Position numbers and translations under genes: made by a program. Shown here one piece after another: positions 6,715-18,370 of a stretch of DNA of 62,174 nt (its first letter is position 1; every line of letters begins with the position of its first letter). The stretch is from Gekko japonicus (lineage: Eukaryota), in the NCBI RefSeq assembly GCF_001447785.1, contig NW_015172565.1:1079732-1141905 (forward strand). Direction: 5' to 3'. Under the pieces are notes generated by a model that was given only the letters and a program-made list of their open reading frames with translations, ran no database searches and had not been told where the DNA came from.

Positions 6715-7391
6715 GTAACTGTTCAATATTATCCCCCGGCTTCACATTTTTGCATGACTAAACAGTATGGTTGTAACAATATACATAGTGGGATTTCTCA
6801 AAGTAGTAGTTCCAGTGTTTTTCTCCTATGTACCTACGTAGTTTCTGCTCTCTCCATTTTCTGTCACCAAATCAATTTAAAAAATAATAATATTATTATT
6901 ACTATTTAAGAGACTTACAGAGCACCTCTTCAGAAATCTGCTCCAGGCAACTAAGTAAAAACAAAACAAAACCCATCAATGATAAACAGCTATACATTGC
7001 TTGATACCCACTGAGAAGGGCCATAAACAGCATAACCAAAAGTTAAAAGCAGTAGTCAACAAAAAACAGAGATAGTGATAAAAACCATCACTATGCAGGC
7101 CATAACCAGCTAACAAAGGATAAGATAACACTTATTAAATGGCTGGTTAAAAAGAAATGTTTGGGCCTGATGCCTAAATGTCAATAGGGTAGAAGCCCGG
7201 CGAGCCTCAAGGGGGTGGGTATTCCAAGGGTAAGGCACCATCACTAAGGAAGTCCTGTCTTTAGCTGCCACTTTCCTTATATCTGCAGTCAGGGACACAG
7301 AGAGCAGGAACTGAGATGAAGATTTTAACTGGTGGGCTGAACAATAAAGGAGAAAACAGTCCTTCATATACTATAGTCCAAAGCTATTTAG

Positions 7392-7909
7392 GTGGGTACT
7401 CAGAAGTTTGAGTATAACCAACTTAAAATATAAGTATTTATTACACAGTGTAACAATTAAAAACAAGATGGATACATAAGAAATGCTAAAATCCAACCTA
7501 TAGAACTTGCACTTCAACTGAACATGAATCACATATGCGAATATTTCATAAAAAGCCACTAGACCAGACACATTTCGGCTCACAGAGCCTTCATCAGTAG
7601 CCTAAAACCAAACAGCACACACTTAAAACCATGTACAACAATTAAGGGTCAAGCAGGTTCGTAGTATTTCGATGTAAGGGGAGGTTCCATGTGAAAACCA
7701 GGCTTGTATATAATTCTGAGCCAACTCACAAAGAAGGCAGTGTCTCTCACCAATTATTCTGTCTCTGGCATCTCTGTGTATGCTAATGTACAAACCTGCT
7801 TACACCTTGTAATAAATTCTTTGTCATATTTTTAAATGTGTTGTATTCAGCCTTCTGAGTACCCCACCTTGTAGCCGTAGTTGGGTTTCTCCCCCTGTTG
7901 TTTTTTCTT
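7392..7909. mobile_element. Non-coding PLE-derived insertion with inverted ends, nested in an L2
   Basis: 13-bp TSD CAAAGCTATTTAG at 7379-7391 and 7910-7922. Imperfect inverted repeat between about 7391-7445 and 7808-7869, plus an internal hammerhead. Confidence 0.7.
7562..7602 (-). ncRNA. Minimal type I hammerhead ribozyme relic (PLE/retrozyme type)
   Basis: The minus strand reads GGCTA-CTGATGA-A-GGCTC-TGT-GAGCC-GAAA-TGTG-TC-TGGTC. This is a canonical core, a 5-bp stem II, a stem I, and a minimal stem III (likely CpG-decayed CGCG). Confidence 0.75.
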
Positions 7910-10900
7910 CAAAGCTATTTAGAACCTTCAGTGTAAGAACCCATGCTTTGAATTGTGTCCAGAAATAAGCAGGCGTCCAGTGCAGATCTTTCATCACAGG
8001 GGTGATATGGCTCCTGTATCCAGCCCTCAACAATAGTAACTGACCTGTCACATATTAAGCTGTACCTAACACAGCTAACTGCCCCCCAATAATCACCAAC
8101 CTACAGAAAAAGATGCCGTGTTTTTTTAAAGACAGTATTTTTAAACAAATGCCTGTTGTAGTACAGTTCTATTGATAATAGTATAGCATTTGAAGATTAC
8201 AGACAAAAAAGAAAAGATTGACTCTGTTCAGAAAGCTCAAGAATTTCTAAGGGTTCAGCTGGGAAGGCCAGAGGACGGGAAAAAAGAAGAGGACAGCAAG
8301 TCCAGCAGCGAGCTAGACTCTGGTTCTTCCGGAGAGGACTCTCTGTCAGAGCAAGGGGAAGCAGCCCCAAAAAGTCCTTACAAGCTGCGGAAGAGAAGGG
8401 GAAAGGAGAAGTAAAGGCTGAAGGACTCTGAATTGTGCCTTTGAGACTTTTGTTATGGGATGATTGGGGGTACTGTTTCTAGACAGTTAAATCTAAGTTT
8501 TAAAGAAAAAGTGTTATAAATGTTTGACTCAGTTTATAAAGGGATCAATGATGGGAAGACTTGATGTATCTAAGCTAGTTGGAGGATGTCCTCTCTTGGG
8601 CTTTTAGTTAGTAGTGGGTTCTTTACTTTATCCCGTATATGTAGTTTCCCCTCCCTTTTCTTCTGTTGTAGTTTTTTGTAGTGATAAAAAAATTAAAAAA
8701 AATCCCCTCGGGGGGCTCAAAAAAAAGAAGAGAGAAAATATTTCCTTGCCTCACAGTCAAATCTACATGCAGAGTAGAGTAGAAACAAACCCAGTATAAT
8801 GCCATTTATCCAACATAACCTAGGACAGTGTTAGTCCATGACTTGTGGAGAGCCACATTCATAATTACCATCAACCAAAAGAGCTACATCTACATCCATT
8901 CCTGGCATGAGAACTGCATCTCAGGGAGGCTTTACTTGTCCTTCTGGTGATGGCTATTTCAAGGTGGGAACCATTGTCAACCACAAACAAGGCAAGGGCC
9001 TTGCCCACTTTCCTAAAACAGGGGGCAGATGCAAAATTGGAAAACAGAGTTCAGGAGAGCCACAGGTGGCTCCCAAGCCACTGAGTATCACTGATCTAGG
9101 AGATATTCAAGCAATTGGGCCCATTTTAATTATGCAGGACATGGGATTCTGTGATCAAATTTCTTAGACTTAAAAAAAGGCTCAAGGGGCTTATTCTCTT
9201 CCCTCTGAACTATTTCCCTAGAGAGAAATCCAAACTCCCCCAGAGTTGCAAGTAAACCTGGTAGGGAAGAAACACACTTGTCTTTTTCGCTTATCAGATC
9301 TGATAGAAGCTTGGACAGTGGGGGGTAGTTTCTCTCAGGGAAACAATGGGAACTTCCCCCTTTCACCAGTTCCACAGCCCCACTGTGGCTGTTTTTAAAA
9401 CTGAAATTACACATCAGGAAATCTGACAACAGATCCCTGGTATTGCCCATAGTTTGACCTTGTGAAATGCAGATAAAGGGGAACATTCACTGACATGGGA
9501 ATGTGTGGGAAACAGGATAGCTTCAGATAATCACAGTTCTTTACTACTGTTTTCAAAATTCATGAGCCAGATGACTTCACAGAAGCATGTTTATCATTCA
9601 GCAACTGCAACGTGGAGATATGACTGGTGGAGGTAAACACCCATCACAGATCATTTCAGACATTCAGCTGTAAAACACAGTACCAAGTGTAATAACTCCA
9701 TCTCTCTTTATACCAAGTGCTTCATAAAACAACCATCTTATATTCTCAGTCAAGTGTGGCCCAATCTAAATCCACGGATTGGGGCCATACTGACTACATA
9801 TTGTTCTGCAAAGTTGGGGGATTCCTCAGGTTTGCAGAAAAATCTGCAAACAACACAGTAGAGCTGGTGGCAGTGGATTCTGGGAACCACTCCGGACCTA
9901 GTTGCAGAGAACTCCAGGAGTGCTCCAGGCCCAGCTGTGGCAGCAGTGGACTCTGGGTGCCGTTCTGGGCCTGCTGTGGTGATAGTGGACTCCAGGAGCT
10001 GCTCCAAGCCCAGAACAGCTCCCCAACACCGCCACAGTTGGGTCAAAGGCAGCTGGTGAGGCCTGGAGCTGTGCTGGGCTCAGTGATAAGGGGAGAGGGG
10101 TTTCCCCTCCCCCCCGCAAGCCTTACAGGCCCTTACTTGTAATATGTATAAGCACTTCACCAGATGGACCAGCCCTGCCCCATGGGAAGACTCCACACCA
10201 ATACCATGCTTTCCTGGGGACCACAAGCACTTGCATATCTACACTGTGAGCTCTTTACATATATTATGGCCACCACCACAGAGAGGTTATAGGGATCTAT
10301 AAAGCAGACTTCATAGGAACTTGCTGGGACCAGGACCAAGGCACTATGAGGAGAATTGCCTGTTTGGACAGCATATAAAGAAGCACGGGAAAATGGGGAA
10401 TGATGCTGATGAGGGCTAATAGAGGAGCACTAAATCAATCAAGTGAATGAGGATGGCATATGTAGAAGGGGAAGGCCAGAAGCCAGGATTTCCAGGGGGC
10501 TCCTCCTTTAAAGAACTGCCACTCAAACCGCTAATTCACTGGAAATAATGCGTGCTTCATCATTTCAGATACTATGTTGGGTCCAGCCAGCTTTTTCACT
10601 CAATCTCCTCCAGTTCTTCTCCTTACTACAACCCCATCCTACCTGGCTTTTGTGTATTCAGGCCCCATGATCCCCAGTATAACTTCTTTTTTGGGGGGTA
10701 GTGGTCAAAGGCGACCACTTCCTTTTTCACCAGCAGGAAAACAGGCTAGATCAAACCCATCAAAAGACCACAGAGCAAGTGGTTATGGAAAAGCAGAAAG
10801 GCAAAGAAACACCCCACCAATGCTGTATTTATTGCTCACAGATACTAAAAGAGGTACTGACTTTGACTGTGTAATGACTGCGCTTTTTGAACTCTTTTAC

Positions 10901-13028: not shown

Positions 13029-13870
13029 CTCAAAGCGAATAGTATGAAAGCCAAGATTCAGAAGACTAGTCATGACAGCCTGAGGGACGTAAGCCGGGCC
13101 GAGGGAGGGCGTCTACTCCGTGCCGGTTTGAGCGCCAGGAGAAAAACAACAGCCGGTGAACCTCCGGGTACGAAGCCAGAAGCCGAAGAACATCAGCCTC
13201 CACCAGGGTGCTGGTAGGCTGCCCCAACCCCCTTCCAGAATGTGGCCATAGTTAAGGATAAAATCATTATTAGCACTCCTCAATGTGAACCGCCCAGAGA
13301 CCCCTACGGGGGTTAGGGCGGTATGCCAAGTCAAATTATTAAATTAAATATTAAATTAATGTCTGGTTTACCATCAGCCAGAAATTAATGGGAGCACAAG
13401 CCAGACAAGATCATGGAGAATGATGAAACAAAGGTTCTTTGGTACTTCCGATTGCAAGCAGATAAACACCTGGAGCATAACACACCTGATATCACAATTG
13501 TAGAAAAATTGAGAAATAGGGCTTGGATAATTGACATTGCAATCCCAGGAGACAGCAGAATAGAAAAGAAAGAACAGGAGAAGATCACAAAAAACAAAAG
13601 CTACGAATAGTGTTAAAGTGCCTCTGGGAGAAGAAAGTTACCATTGTGTCAGTTCTCACTGGAGCCCTTGGAGCAGTGCTAAAAGTCTCTGCAAACACTT
13701 GGACATTCTGGGCATTGAGCTAATAACACCAGCTCAACTCCAGAAGACAGTGTTACTTGGAACAGCAAGAATCCTGCGAAGATACATCTGCAATTCCCAA
13801 GAACTTGGCTAGATCTTGAATTGTAGAACACCATCTACCAGTCAAATACTTGACTGTGACAATACTAACT

Positions 13871-16056
13871 AGCCATGCCTTTAATAAAGAAAAAACGGAA
13901 GTACTTAATTTAGGCTTAGGATTTGTATTCACTCCTACCTACCATGCGTTCCAGACAAGAATTGATATCTTTAAACTTGTAAGACTTATAAAATTGAAAA
14001 CTATGTTCGAAGGAGCGACCTTAACAGAGATAAATCCATTTAAAGTCAGGTCCCAATTTAATCCTACAATTTACGATCCGTCCATAGTAGTATTCGAACG
14101 CAGGGTATTGGAAGATATATCAATTCTGGAACAAAAAGGTCCAAACAGAAAATTTAATATGTCTAAAAAACAGTGGGATAGTCTCATAGAACTCACTAAC
14201 ATACAGGAGATTGTCATTAAAAATGTGGACAAAGGCGGGGCTATCGTTATCCAAGATAGGGAAAAATATCTAACAGAGGCCAATAGGCAGTTAGACAACA
14301 TGGATTGTTATAGAAAAATAGAATATGACCCGACCAATGAAGTCAGCAGAATTATATCAACCACTGTCAATGAGGGACTTTTGTATGATTACATTGATAT
14401 ACAAACAGCTCAGTACCTTTGTAAAAAATACTATAGAGTGCCAATTTTTTACGTGCTTCCTAAAATTCATAAACCCGGTGATCCCCCACCGGGCAGACCT
14501 ATAGTATCGGGGATAAACTCTCAACTAGAGCCCCTATCCAAATATGTTGACTCCTTTCTGAAACCAGCAGTGGTCAAATTAGAATCTTATATTAAGGACA
14601 CCCGCAGTTTTATCCAACTGGTGGAAAACAGAGAGATCCCCCGGGAGCAGTCCTTATGACTATGGACGTGGGAGCCCTATATACAAATATCCCTCATGAA
14701 GAGGCCAGATTGGCCCTGCTCACCACATTGGAAAAAAGGTCCTGCAAGATTCCCCCCACTCATTTTCTTATTGATTTGGTGGATATTATTTTTGAAAAAA
14801 GTTTTTTTCGTTTTGGGTTTGACTTTTACTTTCAAATTAAAGGGGTAGCCATGGGGAGTTCTTTTGCACCGAGTGTGGCTAATTTATTTATGGGTTTTTT
14901 TGAGGAACGGTGGATCACAGATAGGAATGTAAACCCTTTTTTCAACAATATTATTTTATATAAACGTTATATTGATGATTGTTTTTTGATTCTAGATGAT
15001 ATTAATGCAGTTGAACCTTTTTTCCAATGGGTTAATACTATACATACATCCATTAAATTTACCCATGAAGCCAGCCTCTTTGAGATTAATTATTTAGATA
15101 CCACAGTCTTTATTAGTGATGGCAAATTGGCTGTTCGTCCATTCCACAAAAAAACTGATAAAAACTCCATTTTACACTTTGAGTCGCACCACATCAGTCA
15201 TTTAAAATATAATTTACCATACAGTCAATTCCTTAGGATCAAACGAAATTCGACCTTAAAGGAAGACTTCAATAAGGAAGCAGACAGACTCACGGAACAG
15301 TTTCAAAATAGAGGATATCCGGATTGGGTTATTAGGAACGCCCGTTTTAGAGCGGAGCGCCGGGACCGAAAAGACCTGTTTCAAAGCAGTAATGAACATC
15401 CCCATGATGGTAGACTCAATTGGGCACTAGAATTTACAAGCAAGGCGTTTGACATCAAGACTATAATCATGAAACACTGGCATATTCTCAGTGACATTGC
15501 GGCATGTCAGTTACCTTTGAGAGTAGGCTTTAGAAGAACACAAAGCATCAGAGACAAGTTAGTTAGGGCTGATGCCTTTAAGATTCAGGAAGCCGGAGAA
15601 GACCCGATCGGACATTGCAGCTGCGGTAGATGTGCTGCGTGTCCATTAATGACGGAGATTGACACTTTGGAGTTTCCGGATATTAACTTTAAAGAACCCA
15701 TGCATCATTTCTCATCCTGCGCTACAAAATCGGTCGTCTACCTATTGACATGTGCCTGCAACCTGAGATATGTCGGGCAAACATCAAGAGCATTAAGGAC
15801 CCGTGTCCTGGAACATAAATCCAAAATTAAGCATAAACACCTCACTGCTTCTATGGTGCAGCATTTTGAGGAAACCAATCATGGCCCGAGTGATTTTAAA
15901 TGCCTCGTATTGGAAGTAGTAAAAAGTAAACCATTCACCAGTATGGATAAGAAAAAATTATTACTTCAAAGAGAGGCGTTCTGGACGTTCAAACTCCAGA
16001 CAGAACAACCCAGGGGCTTGAATGCCGCATTGGATTTATCATGCTTCTTAGGTTAA
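13871..16056 (+). pseudogene. PLE ORF2: reverse transcriptase + Cys/His linker + GIY-YIG endonuclease, one frameshift near 14640
   Basis: PLE motifs DKGGAIV, FYVLPKIHK, PGRPIVS, MDVGALYTNI, GVAMGSSFAP, RYIDD, YLD, linker CSCGRCAAC, and VVYLLTC..YVGQTSR.LRTR..EH. Adding one C to the C-run at 14638-14642 restores EIPPGAVLMTMDV and a continuous frame. Confidence 0.93.
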
Positions 16057-16612
16057 TAAGATCACTTTTTTGATTGTTAAAAGTACGTATATGATGAAAA
16101 TGTTTTGAGTCTTTCTGGGCGATTCTTGGATAATAAATAAATATCGACTAGACATATTGTATTGGATTAAGGAGCTTAGAGACTAATGGTCAGAAAAATG
16201 TTTAAGCACTTTGGATTTGTTGGTAAGGTGGCCTCTCAGCATCAAACATCATGTGATTTAGAGAGTAGGATATAAGGAACTTTTTTGCAGTCATGTATTA
16301 AGATTTACTATCCGGTAAGAATGTTGTGAATTAGTGAGAGCTGTTCTCAGCCGATATAGGTAAGAAAGAAATTAAAAAATAATTGTTTGTATTATATGGA
16401 GGGATTGAGGTTATGCTGTAACTATGCATGATAGTTTTTATAAATATTTTATTTCTGTCTTCAGAAAACTTACACTTATTGTTGGAAACATTGAAGTAAA
16501 GAATAACACTACAAACTGTATGTATACATATAATTGTACTTTAGTGAAAAAATTGTTAATCTGTAAATGTTGTATTTAATAATTCCTGTTAAAAAATCTA
16601 TCAATTTCTATT

Positions 16613-16678
16613 AGGATGGTTGAGAAAGACATCCAGTCGAAACGAACATCTGTAAACTCGAGAGAGTTCGTACTTTTG
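16613..16678 (+). ncRNA. Candidate type I hammerhead ribozyme (U3-A8 core variant) in the PLE
   Basis: Core TTGAGAA (16620-26) + A, stem II GAC-atcca-GTC, GAAA, stem III ACGAAC/GTTCGT, and cleavage triplet GUA (16670-72). Stem I is weak. Confidence 0.6.
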
Positions 16679-16884
16679 AATACTTGTGAATTAAACATCC
16701 TTGTCATCTTGGATTGGGCTTCTGTCTTCGGATGAAGTTCACCTATTGATACTAAGTAAAATCAACATAACTTATTTACGTGCCTTTAATAGCATGAACT
16801 TGTACAGTAATTTTTTCGTGTGTAATTGACTTTAATTACTGGGTCCATTTGTGTTATCTTGTTCATAAGTCTTAGATTGGGACC

Positions 16885-17599
16885 ATGTCATCATTAAATC
16901 AGAGATTTGCTTTCTCTGAAGAAGATAAGCAGAGAATTTTGGGGAATTGTTCAGGACTTAAGAGAGATAGCAGGAGTCCATCTGATTGGACCCAACTGGA
17001 CTTTCTTAACAAAAAAGAAATTCGGATGTCACTCCATGCGGCATCCCTTACTGAGTATTGTAAAGCTGACCTCATTCCACGGGGTCTTAGACTTCAAAAG
17101 GGACCCGCTATGTTTCTTAACAAGGAAGAGTTCAAAAGTAAATGGATAGCCATTCTTAATAAGTGTTCCTTTGATTTAATGTTACTAGTCATTGATGAGG
17201 CTTCTCGTGAGGCTACCACCATACAAGAAGAGATTAAAGAAGTGGAAGATAAACTCAAAAAATCGTTCAGCCAGGAAGAATTTGAAAACAGACTTAAGAC
17301 TTTAGAAGAGGATCTTAGAAATTGAACTTAAAAAATTAGACAGGGATCAGAGGGACTATACCCTTAACAGGGTCTACAAATGGTGCTCACCGAACGCCAA
17401 TGCTCCCATTAAAAGAGTATCTTGGGCCGATGCAAGGGACCCGATATCCGATATGGATACAACTGAAGCCGAAGATTCGGCAACAACTTCGGGTGAAGAA
17501 AGTTACAATAGGAGACCTTTTTTAGAAAGGAGAGCAAAAAACAGAAAGGAAGGGGGACCATCACAAGGATACAAACGAGGCAAGAAGAAGAACTGGTAG
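16885..17599 (+). pseudogene. PLE upstream ORF1 (helical/coiled-coil-like, acidic then basic C-terminus), disrupted near 17320
   Basis: MSSLNQRF...LHAASLTEYCKADLIPRGLR...WIAILNKCSFDLMLL. After an apparent deletion or frameshift near 17320 it continues as ELKKLDRDQRDYTLNRVYKW...RRPFLERRAK...KKKNW* (TAG at 17597-17599). Confidence 0.75.
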
Positions 17600-17699
17600 T
17601 TAATTTGTCTAGCCATGCCTTTAATAAAGAAAAAACGGAAGTACTTAATTTAGGCTTAGGATTTGTATTCACAATACTAACAACAACAATAACTTTGTC

Positions 17700-18370
17700 C
17701 CCATGCACAGTCTAAAAACACACTCACCAGACCTAACAATACTACCCAGACCATCTCAGGTTCATTCACTTGCTCATCTTCCAACATTACGTACTCCATC
17801 AAGTGTCAACAGTGCCCTTCTACTCTCTAACATCAGCACAAGCCAGTCCCTACGTGAAAGAACAAATGGAATAAATCTGACATTAAATATCACAGTACTC
17901 AGGAACCAGTGGGAGAACATTTTAATCTTCTAGGACATTCCATTTCTGACCTAAGAGTGGCAGTTCTTCTACAAAGTTCTAACACAGATTACAATCTGAG
18001 TTCGTGGAACTAGAATTCATTAACAAGTTCAGGACAATGGACTTCCCATGGCTGAACAGGGACACAGGATTCTTATTTCTTTACAGATGCTAATTTTCTG
18101 GACTTCCCACCTCTATGCATATCTTGTTGCCCTTATTCAGCTGCTTACATTATGCTTTATACCTCCACATCCTGACTCCATCTGGCTCTTCTTAGTAATA
18201 CAACAGTCACTTCTCCCACTGTCTGGATATAAGGATCGATGTATCTGACAAAGCGAGCTTTAACTCATGACTGCTTATACCCTGGAAAATTTTGTTGGTC
18301 TGTAAGGTGCTACTGGACTTGAATTTTGTTCTGGTACTACAGACTAACATGACTACTCGTGTAGTAACTA
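17700..18370 (+). mobile_element. Older, degenerate PLE 3' fragment (GIY-YIG remnant + tail with decayed hammerhead)
   Basis: Translates to TISGSFTCSSSNITYSIKCQQCP...SQSLRER...PVGEHFNLLGHSISDLRVAVL. The tail GTATCTGACAAAGCGAGC..CTCATGA..TAAGGTGCTAC..CAGACTAACATGACTAC is typical of sauropsid PLE ends. Confidence 0.75.

What the first reader, a model, noticed from the sequence alone, without database searches (positions are those of the whole stretch)
13859..17681. Circularly permuted PLE insertion: exactly one unit plus 64-bp terminal redundancy, suggesting reverse transcription of a circular RNA
Seen: the insertion starts inside the RT ORF, runs through RT-EN, the non-coding region and ORF1, and re-enters the RT ORF. 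It ends after repeating its first 64 bp exactly (13869-13932 = 17609-17672; period 3740 bp). One 11-bp TSD flanks the whole thing, with 1-2 nt microhomology at the junctions, so this is a single event. The repeat lies in coding sequence, not in the usual pseudo-LTR. Inference: RT initiated internally and went slightly more than once around a circular template, or read through a tandem transcript. With the hammerhead candidate this would parallel retrozyme circRNA replication, but in an autonomous element.
Basis: partly seen in the sequence, partly recalled or inferred. Interest (0 to 1): 0.85.

Follow-up and report, generated by a model that had tools for sequence, protein, structure and literature searches.

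The report
Slightly over-length Penelope-like retrotransposon copy
A fairly young copy of a Penelope-like jumping gene in a lizard-type genome was reverse-transcribed from an RNA longer than one element unit, which is how these elements normally insert; its copying start point is unusual, but nothing shows that the RNA was a circle.

Summary
An exact 64-nt direct repeat (13869-13932 = 17609-17672, spacing 3740) ends one insertion flanked by a perfect 11-bp target duplication.

The insert is a Neptune-like Penelope-like element (PLE). It carries ORF2 (RT, Cys linker, GIY-YIG), an 828-bp non-coding stretch with a U3-A8 hammerhead motif, ORF1, then the first ~80 nt of ORF2 again.

More-than-unit insertions are the defining PLE layout. 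Relatives fetched here show 3 units+119 bp and 1 unit+376, +521 and +2141 bp. A circular-RNA template for them was proposed in 2014 (PMC4209133). Internal initiation inside coding sequence was shown in 2024 (PMC11167929).

One feature is atypical. The 3' end lies 1052 nt after the hammerhead core. It is about 120 nt in the Anolis element, 205 nt in another PLE in this window and 200-260 nt at 28 of 30 sites in relatives. Reverse transcription probably began off-site, on an RNA that spanned a unit junction.

A tandem read-through transcript, a circle and template jumping all predict this sequence.

This is a new member of a known kind, of modest interest.

The parts
13859..13869 (+). Left copy of the 11-bp target-site duplication (ACAATACTAAC). 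The last C is shared with the element.
13869..13932 (+). 5' copy of the 64-nt terminal redundancy. It encodes the conserved N-terminal PLE motif (..SHAFNKEKTEVLNLGLGFVFT).
13850..14659 (+). ORF2, N-terminal part (N-terminal motifs, DKGG, RT fingers). 44% identical to residues 5-267 of the 730-aa homologue P0001.
14635..14656 (+). Frame break in ORF2 of this copy. The match to the intact ORF2 of L002 changes reading frame here.
14656..16056 (+). ORF2, RT core (YIDD), thumb, Cys-rich linker (CSCGRCAAC) and GIY-YIG endonuclease.
16057..16884 (+). Non-coding inter-ORF region, equivalent to the pseudo-LTR core of other PLEs.
16620..16672 (+). Hammerhead-like motif of the U3-A8 class: core TTGAGAA, one unpaired A, a 3-bp stem II, GAAA, a 5-bp helix III. 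The predicted cut is at 16672/16673. Helix I is weak and there is no Rfam hit.
16885..17325 (+). ORF1 (146 aa here), homologous to the N-terminal 148 aa of the 328-aa ORF1 of L002 (E 2e-15). It carries the shared IP(K/R)GL motif. In this copy it ends early at a stop.
17024..17046 (+). Hairpin with CACUCC in the loop at ORF1 +139 to +161. Candidate usual start site of reverse transcription (inference).
   Evidence: -10.8 kcal/mol, z -2.0; analogy with PAc +111-118 and L047 +129
17326..17598 (+). Stretch open in another frame. It probably continues ORF1 up to the ORF1/ORF2 overlap (inferred from L002, where ORF2 overlaps ORF1 in the -1 frame).
17609..17672 (+). 3' copy of the 64-nt terminal redundancy. 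cDNA synthesis started at its end, with the 2-nt AC overlap to the target. The end sits at the loop edge of a small hairpin in a C-rich patch.
17671..17681 (+). Right copy of the 11-bp target-site duplication.
17693..18052 (+). Older, decayed GIY-YIG remnant of a different PLE immediately downstream of the target site (flank, not part of the insertion).

Best explanation
This is one target-primed reverse-transcription event of a Neptune-like Penelope-like element. The template was a linear RNA longer than one unit, most likely a read-through transcript of a head-to-tail array that was not cut at its hammerhead.

Shown: the structure, the target duplication, the element's identity, and the requirement for a template spanning a unit junction.

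Inferred: the GIY-YIG nuclease made nicks staggered by 11 bp in an A/C-rich target next to an (AAC)n stretch. The bottom-strand 3' end (..TTGT) paired with two bases (AC, 17671-17672) of the RNA. That site is in a C-rich hairpin loop at the very start of ORF2 of the downstream unit. cDNA synthesis ran back through ORF1, the hammerhead region and the whole upstream ORF2. It ended 64 nt past the point equivalent to its start.

Also inferred: the start site is probably off-site, about 640-850 nt downstream of where this clade normally starts. On this reading, the length of one unit plus 64 bp is one draw from a broad distribution of 5' ends.

The copy carries frame breaks in ORF1 and ORF2. ORF2 also lies upstream of its own promoter-bearing region, so the copy is a dead end.
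For: Structure and duplication.

PLE identity.

More-than-unit copies with fixed 3' ends and variable 5' ends are the rule in relatives. L047 is 3 units + 119 bp, L057 1 unit + 521, L033 1 unit + 376 and L061 1 unit + 2141. The same is stated in the literature (PMC8557442).

Internal initiation on multi-copy transcripts, and hammerhead cleavage not being needed for insertion in vitro, were shown for PAc (PMC11167929). That work also saw minor priming at the RNA 3' end.

Off-site start: the distance from hammerhead core to 3' end is 1052 nt here. It is 201-258 nt at 28 of 30 hammerhead sites in relatives, 205 nt in the old PLE at 7392-7909 and about 120 nt in PAc. None of about 165 distinct 3' homology ends around 60 ORF2 N-termini in relatives fell in the bin (0 to +99 nt from the point equivalent to 13850) that holds this copy's end at +82.
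Against: No other copy of this family could be examined, so its usual 3' end is inferred by analogy only. Most comparison sites come from one metagenome-assembled eukaryote whose elements target (CCCTAG)n.

The end does sit in a C-rich patch at a hairpin loop, like a genuine start site. It could therefore be this family's normal end.

A length only 1.7% above one unit has about a 2-3% chance per copy if the remainders are uniform. A circle with poor strand displacement would explain it more naturally.

No tandem master array was found.
Confidence: 0.62

Rival explanations
1. Circular RNA template. A unit-length RNA is cut at the hammerhead (16672/16673) and ligated into a circle. The RT primes anywhere on it, goes once around and stalls 64 nt into its own cDNA-RNA duplex.
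For: It explains the junction-spanning template and the near-unit length in one step. A plausible hammerhead of a class common in this clade lies at the presumed unit boundary. The model was proposed for PLEs in 2014. Related non-autonomous retrozymes do form circRNAs (PMC7229834).
Against: Nothing in the sequence is specific to a circle. The hammerhead has a 3-bp stem II, a poor helix I and no Rfam hit. In PAc, hammerhead mutants insert normally and no RNA-seq reads end at the cut site. Relatives show multi-unit arrays and remainders from 119 to 2141 bp, so one round plus a short overlap is not a general rule. This is a single copy, chosen because it looked odd.
Confidence: 0.15
2. End-to-end template jumping. 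The RT starts inside a hammerhead-processed, unit-length linear RNA, reaches its 5' end at 16673, jumps to the 3' end (16672) of a second RNA, and continues until it stops in ORF2.
For: It gives the same seamless junction. End-to-end template jumping is known for the R2 RT (my own knowledge, not checked here). PAc is modelled as a dimer that could hold two RNAs.
Against: It needs efficient hammerhead cleavage, which is unsupported for PAc in vivo. Jumps usually leave extra or missing bases, and none can be judged without a reference junction. The near-unit length would still be a coincidence.
Confidence: 0.08
3. The ends are the family's normal, fixed ends. Its RNA or its RT start site is defined so that every full-length copy begins at ORF2 +~20 and ends at ORF2 +~82, with a 64-nt R-like redundancy. 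Positions are counted from 13850.
For: The end lies in one of the two most C-rich patches downstream of the hammerhead, at a hairpin loop. This resembles the AC-rich stem-loop start site of PAc. The terminal overlap of 64 nt is of the same order as the PAc cut-to-start distance (85-92 nt) and the 119 bp of L047.
Against: In PAc, in the L047/L057/L033/L061 families and in the old PLE of this window, the end lies 120-260 nt after the hammerhead and at or before the start of the ORF1 domain, never at the ORF2 start. There is no hammerhead core upstream of the 5' end, although it follows GTC.
Confidence: 0.12
4. Assembly collapse. The real locus holds several identical units plus 64 bp, reduced to one unit by the assembler.
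For: Identical tandem units are easily collapsed. L047 shows a 3-unit array with a short remainder.
Against: There are no gaps or Ns in the region. Collapse would change the unit count, not the ends or the mechanism.
Confidence: 0.1

Closest known systems
Partial-tandem / pseudo-LTR architecture of endonuclease-bearing Penelope-like elements (Evgen'ev and Arkhipova 2005; Craig et al. 2021, PMC8557442)
   Same: One TSD-flanked insertion longer than one unit. The upstream unit is 5'-truncated, so a direct repeat frames the copy. RT and GIY-YIG share one ORF, and a hammerhead lies in the inter-ORF region.
   Different: The repeat is only 64 bp and lies wholly in ORF2 coding sequence. Both ends are shifted about 0.65-0.85 kb downstream of where relatives place them, so ORF1 and the non-coding region sit in the middle of the copy.
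Poseidon_Ac (PAc) of Anolis carolinensis: internal initiation of reverse transcription (Frangieh et al. 2024, PMC11167929)
   Same: Squamate host. The template is a multi-copy transcript. The RT starts inside coding sequence in a C/A-rich stem-loop, at a site not homologous to the target beyond 0-2 nt. Targets are AT-rich.
   Different: PAc starts 111-118 nt into its single ORF, about 85-92 nt after the hammerhead cut. Here the start is 787 nt after the ORF1 ATG and 1000 nt after the predicted cut. PAc has one fused ORF and a 126-bp spacer. This element has ORF1 plus ORF2 and an 828-bp spacer.
Neptune-type PLEs with a separate ORF1 (Craig et al. 2021, Fig. 1), and the metagenomic relatives L001, L002 and L047 fetched here
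   Same: A Cys-rich linker precedes GIY-YIG. The ORF1 carries a coiled-coil-like region and the IP(K/R)GL motif. ORF2 is in the -1 frame relative to the end of ORF1. ORF2 begins with VVNLS..L..GL.F.PT.
   Different: Identity is at most 38-44% in ORF2 and 28-30% in ORF1. This copy has frame breaks in both ORFs. Its closest relatives (L001-L003) show no hammerhead by my scan.
Retrozymes and the circRNA model for PLE tandems (Cervera and de la Pena 2014, PMC4209133; de la Pena et al. 2020, PMC7229834 and PMC7761336)
   Same: A hammerhead once per unit and a more-than-unit cDNA are what that model predicts.
   Different: Retrozymes are small and non-coding, with demonstrated circRNAs. This element is a 3.7-kb coding element, and no RNA evidence is available for it.

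Membership tests
Penelope-like elements, endonuclease-bearing (EN+) | RT and C-terminal GIY-YIG endonuclease in one ORF, related to known PLE proteins | tested here: met
   Pfam RVT_1 and GIY-YIG. 46 homologues, best E 5e-125, full length 730-776 aa. N-terminal part 44% identical to P0001.
Penelope-like elements, endonuclease-bearing (EN+) | More-than-unit insertion forming a terminal direct repeat (pseudo-LTR), flanked by a target duplication | tested here: met
   64-nt exact repeat, spacing 3740, 11-bp TSD.
Penelope-like elements, endonuclease-bearing (EN+) | Sense-strand hammerhead motif in the inter-ORF region | tested here: inconclusive
   The U3-A8 core with an unpaired A, a 3-bp stem II and a 5-bp helix III at 16620-16672 is one of only two such motifs in 62 kb. 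The same class is abundant and sense-specific in relatives. But there is no Rfam hit, helix I is weak and cleavage is untested.
Neptune clade of PLEs | Extra CX2-5CxxC Zn-finger-like linker before GIY-YIG | tested here: met
   CSCGRCAAC stands in the 466-aa translation upstream of the GIY-YIG match. The criterion is from PMC8557442. It does not separate Neptune from Nematis.
Neptune clade of PLEs | Phylogenetic placement of the RT within Neptune | not tested
   No reference set of named clade members was available, so no tree was built.
PAc-type canonical 3' terminus | 3' end about 85-260 nt after the hammerhead, at the start of the first ORF or N-terminal domain | tested here: not met
   1052 nt after the hammerhead core and 787 nt after the ORF1 ATG. 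Compare 120 nt in PAc, 201-258 nt at 28 of 30 sites and 205 nt in this window's other PLE.
PAc-type canonical 3' terminus | Start inside an AC-rich stem-loop, without homology to the target | tested here: inconclusive
   Small hairpin at 13911-13941 with the end at the loop edge: -7.1 kcal/mol, z -1.3. The patch is C-rich. Microhomology to the target is 2 nt.
Retrozyme / hammerhead circRNA replicon | Small non-coding, non-autonomous unit | tested here: not met
   The 3.74-kb unit has ORF1 and RT-EN ORF2.
Retrozyme / hammerhead circRNA replicon | Unit-length circular RNA detectable | not testable with these tools

The most novel reading that the evidence does not exclude
Autonomous PLEs can be reverse-transcribed from a hammerhead-processed, ligated unit-length circular RNA. 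The RT can prime at non-standard places on the circle and stops shortly after one turn, leaving circularly permuted copies of one unit plus a short overlap. This copy would be the first genomic footprint of that route.
Probability: 0.12. Interest if true: 0.8.

Novelty: new member of a known kind. Interest (0 to 1): 0.3.

Why it matters
How PLEs create and maintain the head-to-tail arrays they need to stay active is still open. The circRNA model of 2014 has never been tested directly. A family in which many copies were permuted at different points, each just over one unit long, would be strong genomic evidence for a circular or rolling template.

This single copy cannot carry that weight. It does show that a PLE RNA spanning an uncut, or re-joined, hammerhead junction served as template, and that reverse transcription can start far from the usual site.

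The survey of relatives gives a usable yardstick for judging such cases: a fixed 3' end about 200-260 nt after the hammerhead, with variable 5' ends.

Tried and rejected
Hammerhead searches:
- Rfam at gathering and at E<=10 over the window and the inter-ORF and ORF1 regions gave no hammerhead hit.
- The 5' end follows GTC at 17607-17609, so I asked whether it is a hammerhead cut site. No CUGANGA/GAAA core lies upstream. Rejected.

Signals at the 3' end:
- An AATAAA stands at 17622-17627, but it is 45 nt from the end and there is no A-tail. Rejected as a poly(A) explanation.
- The 11-nt TGCCTTTAATA occurs at both 16781 and 17616 and could be a recognition motif. The local alignment is not significant (p about 0.06).
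- I looked for homology between this element's non-coding region and the older PLE at 7392-7909, to transfer its terminus. There is none beyond the hammerhead core.

Search for other copies of the family:
- None in the window.
- None by sequence in the scan's notes.
- The exact proteins are not in the protein collection.
- The best protein homologue of the 466-aa part is only 42% identical.

Other readings considered:
- Age of the frame breaks: zero differences in 75 duplicated bases is compatible with both pre- and post-insertion mutation. No conclusion.
- A DNA-level origin (deletion from a larger array, or re-integration of a DNA circle) does not fit a perfect 11-bp target duplication abutting both ends.

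Full report
**Observation**

The window holds an exact 64-nt direct repeat at 13869-13932 and 17609-17672, spaced 3740 nt. Directly outside it, ACAATACTAAC occurs at 13859-13869 and 17671-17681, 11 of 11 identical. One base (C) is shared at the left junction and two (AC) at the right. The region has no assembly gaps, and the window holds no second copy of the element.

**What the insert is**

From left to right it contains the following.
- A frame from 13850 to 14659 that is 44% identical to residues 5-267 of a 730-aa homologue.
- A 466-aa ORF (14656-16056) with weak Pfam RVT_1 and GIY-YIG matches and 46 homologues down to E 5e-125.
- 828 nt without a long ORF.
- A 146-aa ORF1 (16885-17325).
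- About 270 nt open in another frame.
- The ORF2 frame again from about 17594 to the end.

Full-length homologues are 730-776 aa and begin with M(V/I)xNLS..L....L.KGL.F.PT. The 64-nt repeat encodes exactly this N-terminal motif. A Cys-rich linker (CSCGRCAAC) precedes the GIY-YIG domain, the feature that marks the Neptune and Nematis clades (PMC8557442).

ORF1 is a real gene. It matches the first 148 residues of the 328-aa ORF1 of the metagenomic relative L002 (E 2e-15) and that of L001 (E 7e-19). In L002 the ORF2 overlaps the ORF1 end in the -1 frame, as described for some PLEs.

Against the intact L002 ORF2, this copy changes frame at about 14635-14656. Its ORF1 also ends early. The copy is therefore broken in both genes. 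I did not repair or join anything.

Earlier notes of this scan call the genome squamate. I did not test that.

**The hammerhead**

Rfam finds nothing. A structural scan allowing one unpaired base after A9 finds only two motifs in the whole 62 kb, counting both strands.
- One is a canonical minimal PLE hammerhead on the minus strand at 7597.
- The other is the motif at 16620-16672: core TTGAGAA, an unpaired A, a 3-bp stem II, GAAA, a 5-bp helix III, and a predicted cut at 16672/16673.

In 470 kb of 79 related PLE loci, the same scan with a stem II of at least 4 bp gives these counts on the sense strand: 32 C3/G8, 23 U3/A8, 3 A3/U8, 2 U3/G8 and 1 A3/G8. It finds 2 motifs on the antisense strand. 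The U3-A8 form with an unpaired base is therefore a common natural variant in this clade. Cervera and de la Pena also describe the unpaired base.

The motif here is plausible, but its stem II is short, its helix I is poor, and the fold is no better than shuffled sequence.

**How ordinary is one unit plus a bit?**

The literature defines PLE insertions as partial tandems in which a 5'-truncated upstream unit creates the pseudo-LTR. Some of the 79 relatives fetched from metagenome assemblies show both borders of an array. Their layouts are as follows.
- L047: 3 units of 3922 bp plus 119 bp.
- L057: 1 unit plus 521 bp.
- L033: 1 unit plus 376 bp.
- L061: 1 unit plus 2141 bp.

Within the L047/L043/L057/L074 family, four copies share one 3' end to within 3 nt, while their 5' ends differ. 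The 64-bp repeat here is the short end of a known continuum. It is a pseudo-LTR by definition, even though it is coding.

**Where reverse transcription should have started**

Frangieh et al. 2024 showed that the Anolis element PAc starts reverse transcription internally, 111-118 nt into its ORF, in an AC-rich stem-loop of a multi-copy transcript. Its hammerhead core lies at -6 to +1 and its cut at about +26 to +30.

In L047 the 3' end equivalent lies 129 nt into ORF1. In L033 it lies about 70 nt before the N-terminal domain's ATG and 201 nt after the hammerhead core.

Across the relatives, homology between copies ends 201-258 nt after the hammerhead core at 28 of 30 sites. The other two ends are explained by a nested insertion or a continuing array. 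The old PLE at 7392-7909 of this window gives 205 nt.

Here the distance is 1052 nt. Around 60 ORF2 N-termini in the relatives, none of about 165 distinct 3' homology ends fell in the first 100 nt counted from the point equivalent to 13850, which is the bin holding this copy's end at +82.

Caveat: most of these sites come from one assembled eukaryote whose elements end in, and target, (CCCTAG)n. The closest relatives, L001-L003, show no hammerhead.

By analogy, the usual end of this family should lie between about 16820 and 17035. A hairpin at 17024-17046 (ORF1 +139 to +161, -10.8 kcal/mol, z -2.0) carries CACUCC in its loop. The actual end is CAC|UCC at the loop edge of a weaker hairpin, in one of the two most C-rich patches of the region. 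This resemblance is a lead, not a result.

**Mechanism**

The following is shown. The cDNA began at 17670-17672 and ended at 13869/13870, so its template ran continuously from ORF2 across 16672/16673 into ORF1 and the ORF2 start. The template was therefore longer than one unit and either uncut or re-joined at the hammerhead.

The following is inferred.
- The target was nicked with an 11-bp stagger.
- Priming used a 2-nt AC overlap.
- The start was off-site, on a read-through transcript of a tandem array.
- The 5' end fell by chance 64 nt beyond one unit. The chance is about 2-3% per copy if remainders are uniform, and this copy was picked because it looked odd.

PAc data favour unprocessed multi-copy RNA. 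Hammerhead mutants insert normally, no reads end at the cut site, and minor priming at RNA 3' ends was seen.

A circular template explains the near-unit length more neatly, and I give it about 0.15. However, nothing in the sequence is specific to it. Multi-unit arrays and long remainders in relatives show that one turn plus a short overlap is not general. Template jumping between processed RNAs, and a family-specific fixed end, remain possible.

**Surroundings**

The target lies beside an (AAC)n-like stretch. Upstream is the C-terminal part of a LINE-like ORF (13385-13812). Downstream is a decayed GIY-YIG remnant of a different, older PLE (17693-18052). A bias of Neptune-type PLEs for microsatellites has been proposed.

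**Novelty**

The idea that PLE hammerheads yield circular RNAs serving as templates for more-than-unit reverse transcription was published in 2014. Internal initiation in coding sequence was published in 2024. The element is a new member of a known kind. The off-site 3' end is the only unusual point, and it rests on one copy.

**Limits**

- The exact proteins are not in the protein collection.

It remains the decisive step.

Noticed in passing
L001-L079 (79 metagenomic PLE loci): Hammerhead positions 3 and 8 covary on the sense strand: 32 C/G, 23 U/A and 3 A/U, against 2 U/G and 1 A/G. Only 2 motifs lie on the antisense strand in 470 kb. U3-A8 hammerheads with one unpaired base before stem II are therefore a common natural PLE variant that Rfam models miss.
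   Followed up: partly
L043, L047, L050, L057, L058, L060, L061, L074-L076 (contigs WLWD01...): PLE families of one metagenome-assembled eukaryote all end in C-rich CCCTAG-like repeats and sit in (CCCTAG)n microsatellites. The 3' end is fixed at 200-260 nt after the hammerhead core.
   Followed up: partly
L047:2861-14739: A tandem array of 3 units of 3922 bp plus 119 bp. ORF1 (340 aa) starts 11 nt before the point equivalent to the array's 5' end, and the 3' end lies 129 nt into ORF1. The units are 98.7% identical, and the array is nested in an older PLE.
   Followed up: yes
window 17693-18052 (+) and 13385-13812 (+): The new PLE landed between the C-terminal remnant of a LINE-like ORF and a decayed GIY-YIG remnant of a different, older PLE, beside an (AAC)n-like stretch. 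Two PLE insertions therefore lie at one A/C-rich spot.
   Followed up: partly
window 7392-7909: An old 518-bp PLE-type insertion with a 13-bp TSD (CAAAGCTATTTAG at 7379-7391 and 7910-7922) and inverted ends. It has a canonical minimal hammerhead on the minus strand 205 nt from the left end. An extra ~49 nt stands at the right end only, like the one-sided tail described for PLEs.
   Followed up: partly
window 17024-17046 and 13911-13941 (= 17651-17681 equivalent): Two hairpins share CACUCC...AUGCG. One lies at ORF1 +139 to +161, where PAc and L047 start reverse transcription. The other lies at the actual 3' end of this copy. This may be a start-site look-alike. Its significance is untested.
   Followed up: partly
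window 16781-16791 and 17616-17626 (= 13876-13886): The 11-nt TGCCTTTAATA is shared between the zone where the usual 3' end is expected and the start of the 64-nt repeat. It is not significant by shuffling (p about 0.06).
   Followed up: yes
window ~17320 and ~14635-14656: Both genes of this copy are broken. ORF1 stops after 146 codons although homologues run to about 330, and ORF2 changes frame. Whether this arose before or after insertion cannot be told.
   Followed up: partly
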